Shown one piece after another: positions 57,009 to 63,790 of a stretch of 64,000 nt of DNA. The notes beneath the pieces were generated by a model, which worked only from the letters and a program-made list of their open reading frames with translations, ran no database searches and was not told the origin of the DNA. The position numbers and the translations under genes are program-made. Positions within the stretch are counted from its first letter, which is position 1. Every line of letters starts with the position of its first letter. The stretch spans positions 1 through 64,000 of the forward strand of contig NIVC01001988.1 of NCBI GenBank assembly GCA_002269645.1, read 5' to 3'. Source of the DNA: Macrostomum lignano (lineage: Eukaryota).

Positions 57009-58088
57009 TCATTTGCCGTGCAGCTCCGGCAAAATTCGGCCCTTCTTTTTTGCGCGCTCGATTTTGCGCTTTACTCGCGCCTCCCCGCGCGCCCGAATGT
57101 TGGCGCGCCGGCGCTCCTGGCGCTCCGTCTGGCGCTGTTCCACGCCGGCCTGGCGCTCCTGCCATTTGCGCGCCTTCACGCGCCGCATCTTCGCCTGGCG
57201 CTTGGCTGTGCGCGCCAGCCGGGCCGGGTCGTCCTTCACCTTCACACCCTCGGCGCGGGCCATTGCACGCTCCCACCGCGCCTTCTCCTCCAGGCGGGCC
57301 GCCGCCTCGGGATTGGAAGATTTCATCGCCTCGATGCGGCGCCGCTGACGCTCGAGGTCGGCGCCGGCGGTGGTGGGCACCAGGCGGCGCTCCAGCTGCT
57401 TGCGCTGCCGCTTGCGCGTCTCGGCGGCGGCCCGGCTGCCGGTGGTCTCCGAGCCCAGCAGCTCCTCCTTGGCAACCAGGTCGAACTTTGAGTACAAGAT
57501 TTTGCCGTCTTTGTTGTACTTGGCCTGGCTGCCTGACTGCTGCTTCTGCTGCTGCTGGTTCGGCTGAGTCTCATTGGCGGCCGCCAGGTTTTGCACCCGG
57601 CGCTTCAGGGTCGCCTCTTTGCGCTTCAGGCTGCGCCGCTTCTTGCCGCGGTCGCCAGAAGCCGTGGGTTGCGCGTTTCGCTGCTGGCGCAGCTGCTCCA
57701 TGCGGGCCTGCAGCTTCTGCTGCAGCTCCTGCCTGGTGGCCGCCGCCTTCTCCGACTTCGATGGCTGCTGCTGAGTAGCCAGCTTCATCACTGGCTCAAC
57801 GACGGATGAAGAATGTGAAACTGTCGAGTCAGTTTTCAGTTTCTTCTGCTTTTTCTTCGACACCTGATTGAGCTTGCCGAGGGCCGTCAGGACTTTGGCC
57901 GGGTCGGCGAAGTCCGGATCGAAGCGGAGCCGCCGAATGCCGCCGCCGCTGCCCAGGCGGTTCAGCTGCTGGCGCTGCTCGGAGCTGAGGTACAGCGACA
58001 CCGGCAGCAGGCCGAGACAGCGGGACAGCTGGCTGGCGGCATCCGCTGCTGCGGAGTCTGCCGCGGATTCTGAGGCTGTTGTCGCTTC
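57009..58088 (-). CDS. SURF6: Nucleolar protein SURF6/Rrp14; initiator ATG not found in cis
   Basis: GKILYSKFD, WERAMARAEGVKVKDDPARL, KWQERQ...RRANI.AR, KKKGRI. The ORF is entered through acceptor TTGCAG at 58094-58089 in phase 0. Confidence 0.88.
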   Translation of the reverse strand, partial: EATTASESAADSAAADAASQLSRCLGLLPVSLYLSSEQRQQLNRLGSGGGIRRLRFDPDFADPAKVLTALGKLNQVSKKKQKKLKTDSTVSHSSSVVEPVMKLATQQQPSKSEKAAATRQELQQKLQARMEQLRQQRNAQPTASGDRGKKRRSLKRKEATLKRRVQNLAAANETQPNQQQQKQQSGSQAKYNKDGKILYSKFDLVAKEELLGSETTGSRAAAETRKRQRKQLERRLVPTTAGADLERQRRRIEAMKSSNPEAAARLEEKARWERAMARAEGVKVKDDPARLARTAKRQAKMRRVKARKWQERQAGVEQRQTERQERRRANIRARGEARVKRKIERAKKKGRILPELHGK

Positions 58089-58181
58089 CTGCAATGCGTT
58101 CGGTAATCGTTCAAATAAAAAATAATGTCCTTTTACACTACTAGCTGAAAGTAGTTTGAACGAGTGTCACTATCCGATCAC

Positions 58182-58187
58182 TTTATT
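58182..58187 (-). terminator. Candidate poly(A) signal AATAAA about 93 nt upstream of the SURF6 acceptor
   Basis: TTTATT on the + strand, followed on the minus strand by a U-rich tract (58127-58114) and then the acceptor. Confidence 0.4.
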
Positions 58188-58227
58188 AAGAGGCTGACTA
58201 GGGCAATTTTTGAGGACCAAGGATGCC

Positions 58228-59230
58228 TGAATGGCGACTCTTGAGGAGTGAATGGCGACTCTTGAGGAGTGAATGGCGATTCATGAGGGGTGAATGGCGA
58301 TTCTTGAGGAGTGAACGGCGATTCTTGAGGAGTGAATGGCGATTCCTGAGAAGTGAATGGCGATTATTAAGGAGTGAATGGCGATTCCTGAGAAGTGAAT
58401 GGCGATTCTTGTGGAGTGAATGGCGACTCTTGAGGAGTGAATGGCGATTCCTGAGAAGTGAATGGCGATTATTGAGGAGTGAATGGCGATTCCTGAGAAG
58501 TGAAAGGCGATTCATGAGAAGTGAATGGCGATTCTTGTGGAGTGAATGGCGATTCCTGAGAAGTGAATGGCGACTCTTGAGGAGTGAATGGCGATTCCTG
58601 AGAAGTGAATGGCGATTATTGAGGAGTGAATGGCGATTCCTGAGAAGTGAATGGCGATTCTTGTGGAGTGAATGGCGATTATTGTGGAGTGAATGGCGAT
58701 TCCTGAGAAGTGAATGGCGATTCATGAGAAGTGAATGGCGATTCTTGTGGAGTGAATGGCGATTCTTGTGGAGTGAATGGCGATTCCTGAGAAGTGAATG
58801 GCGACTCTTGAGGAGTGAATGGCGATTCCTGAGAAGTGAATGGCGATTATTGAGGAGTGAATGGCGATTCCTGAGAAGTGAATGGCGACTCTTGAGGAGT
58901 GAATGGCGATTCCTGAGAAGTGAATGGCGATTATTGAGGAGTGAATGGCGATTCCTGAGAAGTGAATGGCGACTCTTGAGGAGTGAATGGCGATTCCTGA
59001 GAAGTGAATGGCGATTATTGAGGAGTGAATGGCGATTCCTGAGAAGTGAATGGCGATTCTTGTGGAGTGAATGGCGATTATTTTGGAGTGAATGGCGATT
59101 ATTGTGGAGTGAATGGCGATTCCTGAGAAGTGAATGGCGATTCTTGAGTAGTGAATGGCGATTTTTGAGGAGTGAATGGCGATTCTAGAGGAGTGAATGG
59201 CGATTAATGAGGAGTGAATGGCGATTCTTG
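58228..59230. repeat. 21-bp minisatellite
   Basis: Unit GAGTGAATGGCGATTCCTGA(G/A). Confidence 0.93.
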
Positions 59231-59989
59231 AAAGGGGAAAAATGGCCAGGTGTCACGGCACTTGAGGACTGAAGGGCGATTCGTGTAACCCAAAAGGGAG
59301 GCGGCTGGGAGCGAGGCAAACGGGAAAGGCCAGAGAAAGTGTAAAAAGTAAGCCGAGTTCCCAGAGCTCGGAGGCAGTTGCTGATTAAACACGGCACAGA
59401 AAAAAACGCATCAAAAGTGAGGCAGAGAAACCCTTCAGGATGGCAAAAAGTCTCCACTGCAGCCGTGCCCGGAACGGTTATTAAACTAATTAATTGTGCT
59501 CAGCCCCTACCGCTAATGACTCTCTCTATCCTCACCTGCGTGAGAAGTCCACAGTAAATAAAACTTGTTTCGAACTAATAGGAAAATAATATTTTATCAA
59601 ACAGAATCCAGTGTATTTTACAGTTTTCATCTCATTACACAAAATATGATTTATTACTTAAATTGAAGTAAACTGTAAATGCGATCATACAGTAACAAGC
59701 AGGTACAAGTTTGTATAGGCAATCATTAACATTGGCTTCTCAACACTAATACATTTCAGACTAACACTTGACAAGCTTCACGAACACTGACTCAATGATA
59801 AGTTGGCTCCGTGACTTCCAGTGCTGCTAGTAAGAGCTAGGAAGGACTCAGATTAACGGTGCTCTGAAACCCCTTCCCACGAGACTTACAAGGCTTTTTG
59901 GGCTTTTAGGCTTGAAATCTGTAAATCGCTGAGATTAAAAAATATTCTCAGTTCCACTAATCTAAATCTCCAATCCGTAAACTTTCCAA

Positions 59990-60725
59990 TGTTCCCAGAC
60001 TTTCCAATCCCCAAGCTTCCCCTTCCCGCAGACTTCCCAATCCCCAAGCTTCCCCATCCCCCGACTTCCCGATCCCCAAGCTTCCCCATCCCTCAGACTT
60101 CCCAATCTCCAAGCTTCCCCATCCCTCAGACTTCCCAATCCCCAAGCTTCCCCCATCCCTCAGACTTCGCAATCCCCAAGCTTCCCCCATCCCTCAGACT
60201 TCGCAATCCCCAAGCTTCCCCCATCCCTCAGACTTCCCGATCCCCAAGCTTCCCCATCCCGCAGACTTCCCAATCTCCAAGCTTCCCCATCCCTCAGACT
60301 TCGCAATCCCCAAGCTTCCCCATCCCTCAGACTTCGCAATCCCCAAGCTTCCCCCATCCCTCAGACTTCCCAATCCCCAAGCTTCCCCCATCCCTCAGAC
60401 TTCGCAATCCCCAAGCTTCCCCCATCCCTCAGACTTCCCGATCCCAAGCTTCCCCAAGCTTCCCCATCCCGCAGACTTCGCAATCCCCAAGCTTCCCCCA
60501 TCCCTCAGACTTCCCGATCCCCAAGCTTCCCCATCCCGCAGACTTCCCAATCTCCAAGCTTCCCCATCCCTCAGACTTCGCAATCCCCAAGCTTCCCCAT
60601 CCCTCAGACTTCCCAATCCCCAAGCTTCCCCCATCCCTCAGACTTCGCAATCCCCAAGCTTCCCCATCCCTCAGACTTCCCAATCTCCAAGCTTCCCCAT
60701 CCCTCAGACTTCGCAATCCCCAAGC
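59990..60725. repeat. ~22-24-bp composite minisatellite immediately after SERGEF stop
   Basis: Alternating CAGACTTCCCAATCCCCAAG / CTTCCCCCATCCCT units. Confidence 0.9.
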
Positions 60726-60734
60726 TGAAATTTC

Positions 60735-62767
60735 TCAAACCGAGTTTCCCACCAGCTCAAAGTCCGGCTCTCCCTGATGCTCAGACAGCAGCGCAAAAGT
60801 GCAGCCGCCGCCAGCGAAGACGGCAGCGGGATCGGCCGGGATCCGCGCCACCGGCCGCGGCTCGGACAGGAACTCGGCGTCCGAGTCAGCGCCGCAGATG
60901 CCGTGCTCGTTCCAGCCCCAGCACAGCAGCAGCCGCTTGGCACCAGCCGCAACCAGGCAGGCCGAGTGCTCGGAGCCGCTGGCGGCCTGCAGGACTCGCC
61001 AGCCGGCCGGCGTGGCCACCGGGAGCGGCCGCCAGGCGTCTCCGGACCGGCCCAGCTGGCCGAGGTCGCAGCGGCCCCAGCTGAGCAGGCGGCCGCTGCA
61101 GGTCAGCAGCAGCAGGTGGGACCAGCCCGAGTGCAGCGACACGATCGGATCCGCTGTCTGCTCCGCCCCCTGATCCGCTGTCTGCTCCGCCCCATCAGCC
61201 GCCAGCGCACCCAGCGGCACGGGCCTGTCGAACGCGATTCCCAATTCGGGCGGCCGGCCGCACTGGCCGTGCCGATTGTCGCCCCAGACGAAGAGTCTGC
61301 CGGGCCCGGCGGTGAGCACGGCTGTGTGGCCGGTGCCCGCTGCTGCAGCCACCGCCGGCTCCGACAGCGACTCCACCAGGCCTGGCTCCGGACCGCCCGA
61401 GTGACCGAGCTGGAAATTTTCAATCAACATTCAATACATGCTTTGTGAACCCCTACCTCTTCCCCGCCCCTTCAATCCACCCTCTACTTCCGCTTCGCCT
61501 CTACAATCATCCATCTACCTACGCTTTGCTCCTACAATCCTCCCTCTACCTACGCTCCGCCCCAACAATCCTCCCTCTACCTACGCTCCGCCCCTACAAT
61601 CCTCCCTCTACCTACGCTCCGCCCCTACAATCCTCCCTCTACCTACGCTCCGCCCCTACAATCCTCCCTCTACCTACGCTCCGCCCCTACAATCCTCCCT
61701 CTACCTACGCTCCGCCCCTACAATCCTCCCTCTACCTACGCTCCGCCCCTACAATCCTCCCTCTACCTACGCTCCGCCCCTACAATCCTCCCTCTACCTA
61801 CGCTCCGCCCCTACAATCCTCCCTCTACCTACGCTCCGCCCCCTCTATTCGCCCTACTTCCGCTCTGCTCTCGCACCTGTCCCCGCCGTCCGCAGCCCCA
61901 GGTGACGACCCGCCCCAGCCGGCGGGTGCAGGCCACGCCGTGCCGCATGCCTGCCGCGCAGACGGCGATTCCCTCGTCCCCGACCTCCGCTGGAATCGGC
62001 ACCAACGCGGGCTGGCGGCAAACCCGGGCTCCGCCTCCACCGCCGACTCCGCACTGGCCCCGGCTGTTGTTCCCCAGCGCCCACAGGCGGGCGTCGGCGT
62101 CCAACAGCAGGCTGAAATCCCAGCCAGCCGAGGCAGCGACAATTCTTGGCGCAGCGGCAAGCGAAGGCGCGGGGGCGAACAGAAGGCCGCCGGAGCCGCC
62201 AGCCTGGCCGCACTGGTCCCAGCCGCAGGACAGTGGCGTCCGCAGTTCGCCGCCCAAAATTATCGAATGGCCGCCGCCGATAACAACGGAAATTGAGCCA
62301 AACGTTTGACCGGAAGTAGACACGGATGCCTGCCCGGAAGTAGACACGGATGTTTGACCGGAAGTAGACACGGATGTTTGGCCGGAAGTAGACACGGATG
62401 TTTGACCGGAAGTAGACACGGATGCCTGCCCGGAAGTAGACACAGATGTTTGACCGGAAGTAGACACGGATGTTTGACCGGAAGTAGACACGGATGCCTG
62501 CCCGGAAGTAGACACAGATGTTTGGCCGGAACTCATGTCTAACACGTCACCGGAAGTGGATTCCAATTTAGCTTCAAGATCTGTATTAGAAATAATACCG
62601 GAAGTGCAATCGGAAATTCCAGACGCCAGAGACACCGCGGCTGGCCGGCCGGAATCGATAGCATGGCCTTGGCCGAGCTGCCCGTAGGAATTGGCGCCCC
62701 AGCTGAACAGGCAATACGCGCGTCCGAAAGGAAGCGGCCGCGCTGCCCGACTCTGGCCGAGATGCGA
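60735..62767 (-). CDS. SERGEF: RCC1-repeat protein SERGEF/DelGEF; initiator ATG not found in cis
   Basis: Exons 62767-61877 and 61409-60735 with a phase-0 intron. Motifs LFSWGANSYGQLG, GGGHS, AGWDFSLLL, AAGMRHGVA, VWGDNRHGQCG, SGWSHL, WGRCDLGQLGR, SGSEHS and WGWNEHGICG appear in SERGEF order. Confidence 0.85.
61455..61845. repeat. 31-bp minisatellite, SERGEF intron
   Basis: Unit CTACCTACGCTCCGCCCCTACAATCCTCCCT. Confidence 0.92.
62305..62530. repeat. 24-bp in-frame repeat in SERGEF exon (TSVSTSGQ x9), each unit containing CCGGAAGT
   Basis: Period 24, and the frame stays open through it. Confidence 0.88.
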
Positions 62768-63122
62768 CTGGAATTGATTGAATAAAACATTCTTTTTGAC
62801 TTTTTATCAAAGTAAGAAAAAAAAGTAATTTTCGATACATATCGGCAACGTAAGTTTAGGACAACAAAAGAGTAATAATAAGCGAAAAAAGGAATTAGCT
62901 AATGCTATAAAAACAGCTCACCCCGAAACTTGGGGACCAACAAGTTCATAGCCCAGAGGCATTGGCAGTTATATTATTGTAATGCATAACGAATTTTATA
63001 TGAAGATCTGCGTTATGTTGAACGCTCAGCAAATACAGCACATTGCTGAATTTAATATTGAGGCACACTTTCTCCGACGAGAGTAAGGAAGGATAAAAAG
63101 AGGGAGATAGGAAGACGGAGGT

Positions 63123-63124
<2 letters not shown>

Positions 63125-63221
<97 letters not shown>

Positions 63222-63790
63222 AGAGAGAGGAAGACAGGATAGATTAAGAGAGAGACAGGGGTGAGAGGGAGACAGGGTGAGAGGGAGACAGGAGAGATTA
63301 AGAGAGAGACGGGTGAGAGGGAGACAGGGTGAGAGGGAGACAGGAGAGATTAAGAGAGAGACGGGTGAGAGGGAGACAGGGTGAGAGGGAGACAGGGTGA
63401 GAGGGAGACAGGGTGAGAGGGAGACAGGAGAGATTAAGAGAGAGACAGGGGTGAGAGGGAGACAAGGGTGAGAGGGAGACAGGGGTAAGAGGGAGACAAG
63501 GGTGAGAGGGAGACAGGGGTAAGAGGGAGACAAGGGTGAGAGGGAGACAGGGGTAAGAGGGAGACAAGGGTGAGAGGGAGACAGGGGTAAGAGGGAGACA
63601 GGAGAGATTAAGAGAGAGACAGGGTGAGAGGGAGACAAGGGTGAGAGGGAGACAGGGGTAAGAGGGAGACAAGGGTGAGAGGGAGACAGGGGTAAGAGGG
63701 AGACAAGGGTGAGAGGGAGACAAGTGAGAGGGAGACGGGTGAGAGGGAGACAAGTGAGAGGGAGACAAGTGAGAGGGAGACAGGGAGATG
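63125..63790. repeat. (GA)n followed by 16-17-bp GAGAGGGAGACA(A)GGGT minisatellite
   Basis: Dinucleotide run at 63130-63213, then a tandem array. Confidence 0.9.

What the first reader, a model, noticed from the sequence alone, without database searches (positions are those of the whole stretch)
57009..62830. SERGEF and SURF6 lack their own ATG: candidate operon with spliced-leader-donated start codons
Seen in sequence: both minus-strand ORFs are closed upstream by an in-frame stop with no ATG before conserved sequence. The first in-frame ATG of SERGEF (62536) lies after WGANSYGQLG. That of SURF6 (57788) lies ~100 codons in, after an Rrp14-N-like LSRCLGLLPVSLYL segment. Each ORF begins at a U-rich-preceded acceptor in phase 0 (TTCCAG|TCG at 62767; TTGCAG|GAA at 58088), and an AATAAA lies ~93 nt upstream of the SURF6 acceptor. 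Established: flatworm spliced leaders end in AUG, which can serve as the initiator, and SL trans-splicing resolves polycistronic transcripts. Inference: SL-AUG gives MSHLGQ... and MEATTAS..., and the two housekeeping genes may be co-transcribed.
Basis: partly seen in the sequence, partly recalled or inferred. Interest (0 to 1): 0.7.

Follow-up and report, generated by a model that had tools for sequence, protein, structure and literature searches.

The report
Flatworm genes with spliced-leader start codons
Two ordinary housekeeping genes of the flatworm Macrostomum lignano (SERGEF and SURF6) have no start codon of their own because the AUG is almost certainly supplied by the spliced leader; this mechanism is already well known in flatworms, so the case is ordinary.

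Summary
The window is Macrostomum lignano contig NIVC01001988.1, with the same coordinates.

**Start codons.**
- Both minus-strand ORFs start directly after consensus trans-splice acceptors: TTCCAG|62767 and TTGCAG|58088.
- Each has an in-frame stop upstream and no ATG before conserved sequence.
- GC content jumps sharply at each acceptor.
- The M. lignano spliced leader (SL) ends in ATG.
- The public RNA-seq-based annotation starts both 5'-partial CDSs exactly at these bases.
- With an SL-Met, both N-termini match the orthologues in length.
- Two of the four assembly copies of SURF6 read CATG instead of GCAG at the junction. These are the SL's last four bases. The assembly was polished with RNA-seq, so this is probably a polishing scar and indirect evidence for SL addition at 58088.

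**Operon.** Plausible but unproven.
- The pair meets the published criterion: same strand, and 911 nt of non-repeat spacer against a 1 kb limit.
- A public gene model fuses the two genes through the SURF6 acceptor.
- However, the annotation puts SERGEF in one transcriptional unit with the upstream TAF3-like gene, and SURF6 in a separate unit.
- The cluster is probably larger: NOL10-like, NDUFA12-like, TAF3-like, SERGEF, SURF6.

**Verdict.** A new instance of a known kind, of low interest.

The parts
62768..62773 (-). SERGEF trans-splice acceptor TTCCAG. The first exon base is 62767.
   Evidence: Read from the sequence. Fits the motif [T/C]TNCAG. GC steps from 0.27 to 0.67 here. Conserved in three assembly copies, and the annotated CDS start is the same in all three.
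62804..62806 (-). In-frame TAA closing the SERGEF frame upstream of the acceptor.
61877..62767 (-). SERGEF coding exon 1 (297 codons, no genomic ATG at its start). The first in-frame ATG comes only at 62536-62534.
   Evidence: Joined to exon 2, it reproduces NCBI PAA61903.1 (P0005, 521 aa, 5'-partial) exactly. RCC1 repeat at residues 21-53.
62304..62531 (-). In-frame 24-nt coding minisatellite inside exon 1, 9.5 copies, encoding STSGQ[T/A]SV.
   Evidence: TRF. Copy number differs among paralogues, giving proteins of 521, 598 and 777 aa.
61410..61876 (-). SERGEF intron (GT at 61876-61875, AG at 61411-61410), phase 0. Mostly a 31-nt tandem repeat (61464-61842).
60735..61409 (-). SERGEF coding exon 2, including the stop (TGA 60737-60735).
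60751..60752 (-). GT donor (CTG|GTGGGA), 5 codons before the SERGEF stop. The public fusion model joins it to the SURF6 acceptor.
   Evidence: P0008 (UniRef A0A1I8IAB2) reads ...EPDFEL|EATTAS.... Both boundaries are canonical GT..AG in the window.
59996..60726 (.). Intergenic tandem repeat: 33/67-nt unit, about 22 copies, 731 nt.
59650..59655 (-). First of only two AATAAA hexamers between the genes. Candidate SERGEF poly(A) signal.
58228..59231 (.). Intergenic tandem repeat: 21-nt unit, about 48 copies, 1004 nt.
58182..58187 (-). AATAAA 94 nt upstream of the SURF6 acceptor. The spacing is that of an operon intercistronic region if this is the SERGEF poly(A) signal.
   Evidence: The repeat-adjusted operon spacer mode is about 100 bp.
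58167..58169 (-). In-frame TGA closing the SURF6 frame upstream of the acceptor.
58089..58094 (-). SURF6 trans-splice acceptor TTGCAG. The first exon base is 58088.
   Evidence: The same sequence is in copy L004. Copies L001 and L003 read TTCATG, where the last 4 nt equal the SL 3' end.
57009..58088 (-). SURF6 single-exon CDS (359 codons plus stop, no genomic ATG at its start). The first in-frame ATG comes only at 57788-57786.
   Evidence: Identical to the NCBI 5'-partial protein P0004. PF04935 at E=2e-27. 7 synonymous against 1 non-synonymous difference to the homeologous copy, including 2 synonymous changes in the first 100 codons.
63051..63056 (-). ATTAAA 284 nt upstream of the SERGEF acceptor. 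It is the only poly(A)-type hexamer between the TAF3-like stop and SERGEF.
63104..63788 (.). CT-rich tandem repeat array in the TAF3-like to SERGEF spacer (the SERGEF outron).

Best explanation
The window is Macrostomum lignano DNA.

Start codons. SERGEF (exons 62767-61877 and 61409-60735) and SURF6 (58088-57009) are spliced-leader (SL) trans-spliced genes. Their first coding exon begins in phase 0 directly at the trans-splice acceptor. The 35-nt SL (...AATTTATTGCATG) is joined to 62767 and to 58088. Its 3'-terminal AUG then serves as the initiator, giving M-SHLGQ... (522 aa) and M-EATTAS... (360 aa).

Operon. The two genes lie at the 3' end of a same-strand cluster: NOL10-like, NDUFA12-like, TAF3-like, SERGEF, SURF6. 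This cluster is probably transcribed at least partly as polycistronic precursor RNA that SL trans-splicing resolves. The spacers are inflated to about 2.6 kb by tandem repeats.

What is shown:
- the gene structures;
- the absence of a genomic ATG;
- the acceptor consensus;
- the species and its SL sequence;
- coincidence with the RNA-seq-derived annotated 5' ends;
- that the published operon spacing criterion is met.

What is inferred:
- actual SL addition at these two bases (probability about 0.9);
- use of the SL AUG as initiator (about 0.85);
- co-transcription of SERGEF with the TAF3-like gene (about 0.7);
- co-transcription of SURF6 with SERGEF (about 0.55-0.6).
For: Species and SL:
- NCBI proteins BOX15_Mlig... 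on contig NIVC01001988.1 of GCA_002269645.1, with the same coordinates as the window.
- The SL is CGGTCTCTTACTGCGAAGACTCAATTTATTGCATG.
- The SL ATG is regarded as a start codon in Macrostomum and in flatworms generally.

Structure:
- In-frame stops upstream, no ATG, phase-0 consensus acceptors and GC steps.
- A conserved RCC1 repeat lies before the first SERGEF ATG.
- In the orthologues, 2-21 residues precede the SWGAN motif; here, with an SL-Met, 22 residues do.
- The SURF6 N-terminal motif sits at the same distance from Met as in its homologues.
- 7 synonymous against 1 non-synonymous substitution between homeologous SURF6 copies.

RNA-derived evidence:
- The deposited annotation cuts genes at SL-read peaks and then calls ORFs.
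- Its 5'-partial CDSs begin exactly at 62767 and 58088. Neighbouring genes start with ATG.
- The assembly was Pilon-polished with RNA-seq.
- In 2 of 4 SURF6 copies, GCAG| is replaced by CATG|, the SL's last 4 nt. This pattern contradicts the copy phylogeny. It is also the only multi-base substitution among 21 differences between the near-identical copies L003 and L004.
- A second case: the NDUFA12-like junction reads CAG| in one copy and CTG| in two others. The changed base at position -2 is the SL's T.

Operon:
- Same strand, with no annotated gene between.
- 2646 nt spacer minus 1735 nt of tandem repeat leaves 911 nt, under the 1 kb criterion.
- AATAAA 94 nt before the SURF6 acceptor.
- Fusion model P0008 uses the SURF6 acceptor in cis.
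- The TAF3-like gene and SERGEF carry the tags Mlig031197 g1/g2 on this contig. The TAF3-like gene alone is g3 on the L001 contig, where the SERGEF tag (predicted g4) could not be retrieved. The pair is g5/g6 on the L003 contig.
- That numbering is the naming pattern for genes cut from one transcriptional unit.
- Fusion model P0107 spans the NOL10-like, NDUFA12-like and TAF3-like genes.
Against:
- SURF6 carries a different transcriptional-unit prefix (Mlig008570) from SERGEF (Mlig031197). The published RNA-seq assembly therefore did not join them, although it bridged the equally repeat-rich TAF3-like to SERGEF spacer.
- The fusion models come from an older annotation whose method I could not read. 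They may be prediction artefacts.
- The raw spacers (2.6 kb) are far longer than the typical spacer of about 100 nt.
- The CATG and CTG variants could be real polymorphisms rather than polishing scars.
- The annotated CDSs of the two CATG copies oddly begin 2 and 7 codons downstream of that ATG. I cannot explain this.
Confidence: 0.8

Rival explanations
1. SL trans-splicing and the SL-donated AUG are real, but SURF6 is monocistronic. It would have its own promoter in the 764-nt unique segment (59232-59995) or the 139-nt segment upstream of the acceptor. SERGEF would end at the AATAAA at 59655.
For: - Most trans-spliced M. lignano genes (about 60%) are not in operons.
- SURF6 has its own transcriptional-unit prefix, distinct from that of SERGEF.
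- An AATAAA at 59655-59650 could end SERGEF 1.5 kb before the acceptor.
Against: - The repeat-adjusted spacing is under 1 kb.
- A second AATAAA lies 94 nt before the acceptor.
- Fusion model P0008 implies read-through RNA.
- The authors state that transcriptional units tend to break in repeat-rich operon spacers.
Confidence: 0.35
2. These are conventional genes. Unannotated upstream exons, cis-spliced to the same acceptors, supply the ATG.
For: A scan finds one phase-0 ATG...GT[A/G]AG-type candidate upstream of each gene. For SURF6 it is ATG AAA ACT|GTAAAA near 59630. For SERGEF it is a 28-codon ORF with GTGAGC at record 64222-64139.
Against: - One candidate per 2.6 kb is chance level.
- The transcript-based annotation has no such exon and marks both CDSs as 5'-partial, starting exactly at the acceptor.
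- The orthologues need no further N-terminal residues.
Confidence: 0.06
3. SURF6 has no start of its own because its main product is a SERGEF-SURF6 fusion protein. The fusion would be made by cis-splicing from the donor at 60752 to the acceptor at 58089.
For: UniRef A0A1I8IAB2 (P0008, 862 aa) has exactly this structure, with canonical GT..AG boundaries.
Against: - The newer evidence-based annotation splits the two genes.
- SERGEF has its own stop 5 codons after the donor.
- The donor GTGGGA is weak against the GT[G/A]AG consensus.
- The same old annotation also fuses three unrelated upstream genes (P0107), which points to read-through or precursor artefacts.
- No RCC1-SURF6 fusion appears among the homologues.
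Confidence: 0.05
4. The missing SURF6 ATG is an assembly or allele problem. Either the true sequence has a genomic ATG (as in copies L001 and L003, or ...TTGCATGG... with an indel error), or the window copy is a defective allele.
For: - Two of four copies read CATGGAAGCG, with an in-frame ATG exactly at the junction.
- The assembly has many single-base indels and frameshifts in these copies.
Against: - The CATG state is shared by non-sister copies and equals the SL 3' end, including the C that an ATG does not need.
- The assembly was polished with RNA-seq.
- The annotated CDSs of the CATG copies do not use that ATG.
- SERGEF shows the same no-ATG architecture with an intact acceptor in all three copies.
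- A second junction shows a one-base change towards the SL that destroys its AG.
Confidence: 0.07
5. Translation starts at the first internal ATGs (SERGEF codon 78, SURF6 codon 101), giving N-terminally truncated proteins.
For: These are the first genome-encoded in-frame ATGs.
Against: - It would delete a significant RCC1 repeat and the conserved SURF6 N-terminal motif.
- The upstream codons evolve as coding sequence.
- An SL AUG would precede these ATGs in frame on the mRNA.
Confidence: 0.03

Closest known systems
Flatworm SL 3'-terminal AUG used as initiator methionine (Schistosoma mansoni; Cheng, Cohen, Ndegwa and Davis 2006, J Biol Chem 281:733, cited in PMC12582326)
   Same: The SL ends in AUG. 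The acceptor lies directly at the first codon, in frame. There is no genomic AUG before conserved protein sequence.
   Different: A different species and SL sequence (the 35-nt M. lignano SL). Use of the AUG is inferred here, not assayed.
M. lignano SL trans-splicing and operons (Wudarski et al. 2017, PMC5730564; Ustyantsev and Berezikov 2021, PMC8629364), for example transcriptional unit Mlig030697 with genes g1 and g2
   Same: - Same genome and same acceptor motif [T/C]TNCAG.
- Conserved housekeeping genes.
- Same-strand neighbours with under 1 kb of non-repeat spacer.
- Spacers inflated by tandem repeats.
- TAF3-like and SERGEF named as g1/g2 of one unit.
   Different: SURF6 is named as a separate unit. 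The SERGEF-SURF6 link rests on spacing and on an older fusion model only. Neither paper discusses these genes or SL-AUG dependence.
Caenorhabditis elegans operons (SL2-resolved, spacers of about 100 nt)
   Same: A poly(A) signal lies about 100 nt upstream of the downstream gene's trans-splice acceptor (94 nt here). Unrelated housekeeping genes are clustered.
   Different: M. lignano has a single SL type, not a specialised SL2. Nematode SLs do not end in AUG and do not donate the start codon. The raw spacers here are 2.6 kb.

Membership tests
SL trans-spliced mRNA initiating at the SL AUG | The organism has an SL RNA whose exon ends in AUG. | tested here: met
   Species identified as M. lignano. 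The published SL ends ...TTGCATG. No SL RNA gene lies in the window itself.
SL trans-spliced mRNA initiating at the SL AUG | [quoted passage not shown] | tested here: met
   TTCCAG|TCG at 62767 and TTGCAG|GAA at 58088. Both fit [T/C]TNCAG.
SL trans-spliced mRNA initiating at the SL AUG | No genome-encoded in-frame AUG between the upstream stop and conserved protein sequence. | tested here: met
   (stops at 62806 and 58169; first ATGs at codons 78 and 101). (RCC1 repeat in residues 21-53). (SURF6 N-terminal motif).
SL trans-spliced mRNA initiating at the SL AUG | The SL sequence is physically joined to the exon in mRNA. | tested here: inconclusive
   No reads or transcripts were retrievable. 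Indirect evidence: the annotated 5' ends, derived from SL-read peaks, coincide exactly with the acceptors, and paralogous copies carry an SL-like CATG scar.
SL trans-spliced mRNA initiating at the SL AUG | The protein N-terminus starts with the SL-encoded Met. | not testable with these tools
   Needs N-terminal proteomics or a reporter assay. Only the match in N-terminal length with orthologues is available.
M. lignano operon (criterion of Ustyantsev and Berezikov 2021) | Immediately adjacent genes on the same strand, with no opposite-strand transcript between. | tested here: met
   The called genes on the contig run TAF3-like, SERGEF, SURF6, all on one strand with nothing between. Non-coding transcripts were not visible to me.
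M. lignano operon (criterion of Ustyantsev and Berezikov 2021) | Repeat-adjusted intergenic distance below 1 kb, with the downstream gene trans-spliced. | tested here: met
   2646 nt minus tandem repeats of 1004 and 731 nt leaves 911 nt, measured from CDS stop to acceptor. This is an upper bound, because the 3' UTR is not subtracted. Trans-splicing of SURF6 is inferred as above.
M. lignano operon (criterion of Ustyantsev and Berezikov 2021) | One polycistronic precursor from a single promoter. | tested here: inconclusive
   For: fusion model P0008, and a shared unit name for TAF3-like and SERGEF. Against: a separate unit prefix for SURF6. No promoter or precursor data could be accessed.
SERGEF (RCC1-like GEF) orthologue | A seven-bladed RCC1-like domain, with best hits to annotated SERGEF proteins. 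| tested here: met
   Pfam RCC1, RCC1_2 and WD40_RLD over both exons. The top non-self hits are named SERGEF, at E=4e-45 to 1e-30 and 83-96% coverage. A reciprocal best-hit test was not done.
SURF6 / Rrp14 family | C-terminal SURF6 domain (PF04935); N-terminal RRP14 domain (PF15459). | tested here: met
   PF04935 at E=2e-27, 96.7 bits against a cut-off of 23.1. PF15459 was not detected; only a short motif aligns.

The most novel reading that the evidence does not exclude
The CATG found in place of GCAG at the SURF6 junction in two of the four genomic copies may be real, not a polishing artefact. The same would apply to CTG in place of CAG at the NDUFA12-like junction. In that case the SL's terminal AUG would have been written into the genome, for example by gene conversion from a reverse-transcribed trans-spliced mRNA. 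An SL-dependent start would have become a self-contained start in some homeologues. That would be a natural snapshot of interconversion between SL-donated and genome-encoded initiation codons.
Probability: 0.08. Interest if true: 0.55.

Novelty: new member of a known kind. Interest (0 to 1): 0.17.

Why it matters
Biologically it matters little. SL trans-splicing affects about 30% of M. lignano genes, about 15% of genes are assigned to operons, and the AUG-ending SL of flatworms is a known initiator. The case is a clean textbook example of two conserved genes that cannot be translated correctly without the SL AUG. It also explains why so many deposited M. lignano proteins are labelled 'partial'.

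The practical value lies in two caveats for users of the Mlig_3_7 assembly.
1. 5'-partial CDSs that begin right after an AG are probably complete once the SL Met is added.
2. RNA-seq polishing seems to have overwritten bases just upstream of some trans-splice sites with SL bases. This destroys the acceptor AG and in places creates false genomic ATGs.

Tried and rejected
- An Rfam scan of the window gave no hit.
- A fuzzy search for the SL in the window found no SL RNA gene.
- TTGCATG is not enriched in the window: 9 found against 10.9 expected.
- An exact look-up of M+SURF6, M+SERGEF and the ATG-truncated forms found none in the protein collection.
- A search with a chimeric N-terminal query that included the SL-encoded peptide found no M. 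lignano transcript-derived protein. It also missed the known cluster, so this negative result is weak.
- Supplements of PMC8629364 and PMC5816591 hold nothing on these gene ids. A full-text search for the ids gave 0 papers.
- The Wasik et al. 2015 paper is not held, so the method behind the fusion models could not be checked.
- Two window ORFs tried as anchors for annotating the rest of the window are not on record.
- Pfam did not confirm an RRP14 N-domain.
- The bacterial-type TTG start listed at 58094 was ignored as irrelevant for a eukaryote.
- An A-run difference near the SURF6 3' end, considered as a possible poly(A) polishing scar, was uninformative.

Full report
**Identity of the sequence.** The SURF6-like ORF translation is an exact match to an NCBI protein on a 215,634-nt contig. 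Its near-identical relatives are named BOX15_Mlig008570g2, g3 and g4 [Macrostomum lignano]. Fetching the encoding contig showed that the window is NIVC01001988.1 of assembly GCA_002269645.1 (Mlig_3_7), positions 1-64000, with identical numbering. The organism is therefore the free-living flatworm M. lignano.

**The observation.**
- SERGEF: the frame is closed by TAA at 62806-62804, with no in-frame ATG before the acceptor TTCCAG (62773-62768). The first in-frame ATG is at 62536 (codon 78).
- SURF6: the frame is closed by TGA at 58169-58167, and the acceptor is TTGCAG (58094-58089). The first in-frame ATG is at 57788 (codon 101).
- Both exon starts are in phase 0.
- GC content jumps from about 0.25-0.35 to 0.64-0.72 exactly at each acceptor.
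- AATAAA lies at 58187-58182, 94 nt before the SURF6 acceptor.
- Only two AATAAA/ATTAAA hexamers exist in the whole 2.6-kb spacer. The other is at 59655-59650.

**Gene models and identities.**
- My SERGEF model is exon 1 at 62767-61877, a phase-0 GT..AG intron at 61876-61410, and exon 2 at 61409-60735.
- It reproduces NCBI PAA61903.1 (BOX15_Mlig031197g2, 'partial', 521 aa) residue for residue.
- Pfam finds RCC1 repeats over both exons, and SURF6 (PF04935, E=2e-27) in the other gene.
- The best non-self hits of the RCC1 protein are annotated 'secretion-regulating guanine nucleotide exchange factor' from many animal phyla, with E down to 4e-45.
- The 77 codons before the first SERGEF ATG contain a significant RCC1 repeat (E=1.2e-6, above the gathering score). 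The internal ATG therefore cannot be the native start.
- For SURF6, Pfam does not detect an RRP14 N-domain.
- LSRCLGLLPVSLYL does align with the corresponding motif of two SURF6 homologues.
- The homeologous copy differs by 7 synonymous and 1 non-synonymous codons, with no indels. Two of the synonymous changes fall in the first 100 codons.

**N-terminal lengths.**
- With a Met added at the acceptor, SWGAN begins at residue 23 of SERGEF. In nine orthologues it begins at residues 3-21.
- The SURF6 motif begins at residue 22, compared with 19 in a homologue that starts with its own Met.
- No further upstream coding exon is needed.

**Spliced leader.**
- M. lignano has one 35-nt SL, CGGTCTCTTACTGCGAAGACTCAATTTATTGCATG. 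About 30% of its genes are trans-spliced, and the top motif at trans-splice acceptors is [T/C]TNCAG (PMC8629364). The eLife transcriptome paper gives the same 3' end.
- The terminal ATG is treated as a likely translation start in Macrostomum (PMC10468722).
- All reported flatworm SLs end in ATG, which can provide a start codon (Cheng et al. 2006, as cited in PMC12582326).
- Both acceptors here fit the motif.

**RNA-derived evidence: the annotation.**
- The GenBank annotation of Mlig_3_7 came from a genome-guided transcriptome. In it, 'transcriptional units' were cut into genes at peaks of SL-containing reads (SL trimmed) and at poly(A) sites. ORFs were then called with TransDecoder (PMC5730564).
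- The deposited CDSs of both genes are 5'-partial and begin exactly at 62767 and 58088.
- The same SERGEF start is used in three assembly copies.
- The neighbouring Fes1-like, SLC3A2-like and TAF3-like genes start with ordinary ATGs.
- This is what an SL site in phase 0 with a trimmed SL-ATG should look like.

**RNA-derived evidence: an SL-like scar in paralogous copies.**
- The assembly holds four copies of the SURF6 locus: L002 (the window contig), L001, L003 and L004.
- At the junction, L002 and L004 read CATTGCAG|GAAGCG. L001 and L003 read CATTCATGGAAGCG.
- The three changed bases (-2, -3, -4) all become the SL's bases, so the last four nucleotides equal the SL 3' end, CATG.
- The state is shared by non-sister copies, since the tree is ((L003,L004),L002),L001.
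- It is the only multi-base substitution among the 21 differences between L003 and L004 over 10 kb.
[quoted passage not shown] For the transcriptome work, STAR was run end-to-end.
- The simplest reading is that SL-bearing mRNA reads overwrote the bases next to the junction. This would be an artefact that incidentally records CATG|GAAGCG in mRNA.
- A second junction behaves the same way. The NDUFA12-like gene upstream on the same contig has CAG|ATT in one copy and CTG|ATC in two copies. At position -2, A becomes the SL's T, which destroys the AG at an annotated SL-type start.
- The alternative is that these are real variants giving some copies a genomic ATG. That cannot be excluded without DNA reads, and it is my 'novel case'.
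- One oddity remains unexplained. The annotated CDSs of the two CATG copies start 2 and 7 codons downstream of that ATG.

**Operon question: points in favour of SERGEF-SURF6 co-transcription.**
- The two genes are on the same strand, with no called gene between them.
- The 2646-nt spacer consists of 1004 nt and 731 nt of tandem repeats plus 911 nt of unique sequence.
- Ustyantsev and Berezikov assign adjacent trans-spliced genes to one operon if the repeat-subtracted distance is under 1 kb. They find a mode near 100 bp.
- The AATAAA 94 nt before the acceptor would give such a spacer if it is the SERGEF poly(A) signal.
- UniRef A0A1I8IAB2 (P0008) is a fusion ...EPDFEL|EATTAS.... It joins a canonical GT (60752-60751), five codons before the SERGEF stop, to the SURF6 acceptor. 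This implies RNA spanning both genes if the model is transcript-based.

**Operon question: points against.**
- Locus tags follow the scheme in which genes cut from one transcriptional unit share a prefix (Supplementary Fig. 5a of PMC5730564).
- The TAF3-like gene and SERGEF are Mlig031197 g1/g2 on this contig. The TAF3-like gene is g3 on the L001 contig; SERGEF there is predicted to be g4, but I could not retrieve its tag. The pair is g5/g6 on the L003 contig.
- SURF6 is Mlig008570 (one gene per copy), as is the convergent Fes1-like gene Mlig023369.
- The published assembly therefore links SERGEF to the upstream TAF3-like gene, not to SURF6.
- The authors warn that units break in repeat-rich spacers, so this is only mild counter-evidence.
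- I could not read how the older fusion models were made.

**The wider cluster.**
- Upstream on the same strand lies a TAF3-like gene. It has its own ATG directly after a cis acceptor, and its true stop is at record 65404. The annotated CDS is cut short by a frameshift in a poly-Pro run.
- The TAF3-like to SERGEF spacer has the same build: 2636 nt, tandem repeats of 835 and 688 nt, and one ATTAAA 284 nt before the acceptor.
- Further upstream are an NDUFA12-like gene with an SL-type 5'-partial start and a NOL10-like gene.
- An older model, P0107, fuses the NOL10-like, NDUFA12-like and TAF3-like genes.
- SERGEF and SURF6 are thus the last two genes of a five-gene same-strand cluster. The cluster ends where the Fes1-like gene (55112-56191, + strand) converges on it.

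**Rivals.**
- Cis exons supplying an ATG. Only one chance-level candidate exists per spacer, and none is in the annotation.
- A SERGEF-SURF6 fusion protein as the main product. The newer annotation contradicts this, the donor is weak, and no such fusion appears among the homologues.
- An assembly error hiding a genomic ATG. This is unlikely, because SERGEF shows the same architecture with an intact acceptor in all copies, and because the variant equals the SL.
- Initiation at the internal ATGs. This would delete conserved sequence.
- The serious rival concerns only the operon: SURF6 may be trans-spliced from its own monocistronic transcript.

**Verdict.**
- The SL-donated AUG is the best explanation for both genes (about 0.85-0.9).
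- Co-transcription is likely for TAF3-like and SERGEF, and about even to somewhat better than even for SERGEF and SURF6.
- The mechanism, the genome-wide prevalence and even these gene boundaries are already in the literature or the public annotation. This is a new, well-documented member of a known kind, and its interest is low.
- The possible SL polishing scars in the Mlig_3_7 assembly are the most useful by-product.

Noticed in passing
L001:9990-10000 and L003:9975-9985 (SURF6 junction; equivalent to window 58089-58092); L007/L008:5998-6000 against L009:5998-6000 (NDUFA12-like junction): Bases just upstream of annotated trans-splice sites are replaced by the SL's terminal bases in some assembly copies: GCAG becomes CATG, and CAG becomes CTG. 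This is probably a scar of the RNA-seq-based Pilon polishing of Mlig_3_7. It destroys the acceptor AG and can create false genomic ATGs.
   Followed up: partly
window 62304-62531 (-): An in-frame 24-nt coding minisatellite (STSGQ[T/A]SV, 9.5 copies) sits inside SERGEF exon 1. Copy number differs strongly between assembly copies, giving proteins of 521, 598 and 777 aa. A smaller 24-nt coding duplication lies at 61148-61202 (GAEQTADQ, with one more copy in L003).
   Followed up: partly
window 31217-37609: A 6.4-kb (GACA)n microsatellite of about 1600 copies at 96% match. It explains the stop-free 'ORFs' of more than 2000 aa in several frames on both strands. GACA-rich arrays also fill the NOL10-like to NDUFA12-like spacer.
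   Followed up: partly
window 58228-59231, 59996-60726, 61464-61842, 63104-63788; L002:2838-3672: Every spacer and the SERGEF intron in this cluster carry long tandem-repeat arrays with units of 17-67 nt. Both intercistronic spacers have the same layout: unique sequence, repeat, unique sequence, repeat, poly(A) hexamer, AT-rich stretch, acceptor.
   Followed up: partly
L005:4567-7364 (record 68201-65404, just outside the window): The TAF3-like gene (Bromo_TP plus a C-terminal PHD finger) is annotated as 723 aa on this contig and 300 aa on another. The true ORF is 932 aa, as in the third copy. The truncations are frameshifts in GC-rich runs, i.e. assembly indels. Similar frameshifts truncate SURF6 in copies L003 and L004.
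   Followed up: partly
UniRef A0A1I8IAB2 (P0008); MetaClust UPI0007A1E793 (P0107): Older M. lignano gene models fuse neighbouring genes of this cluster into single proteins: SERGEF+SURF6, and NOL10-like+NDUFA12-like+TAF3-like. Because of these fusions, the 90%-identity protein clusters mix unrelated families.
   Followed up: partly
L001:10001 and L003:10001: In the two copies that carry CATG at the junction, the annotated 5'-partial SURF6 CDS starts 2 and 7 codons downstream of that in-frame ATG, not at it. I have no explanation.
   Followed up: no
window 55112-56191 (+) and 49690-51654 (+): Two genes converge on SURF6. One is Fes1/HSPBP1-like, 359 aa, with a marginal Pfam PF08609 hit (E=2e-4). 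The other is an SLC3A2/4F2hc-like heavy-chain gene of 654 aa. Both have ordinary ATG starts.
   Followed up: partly
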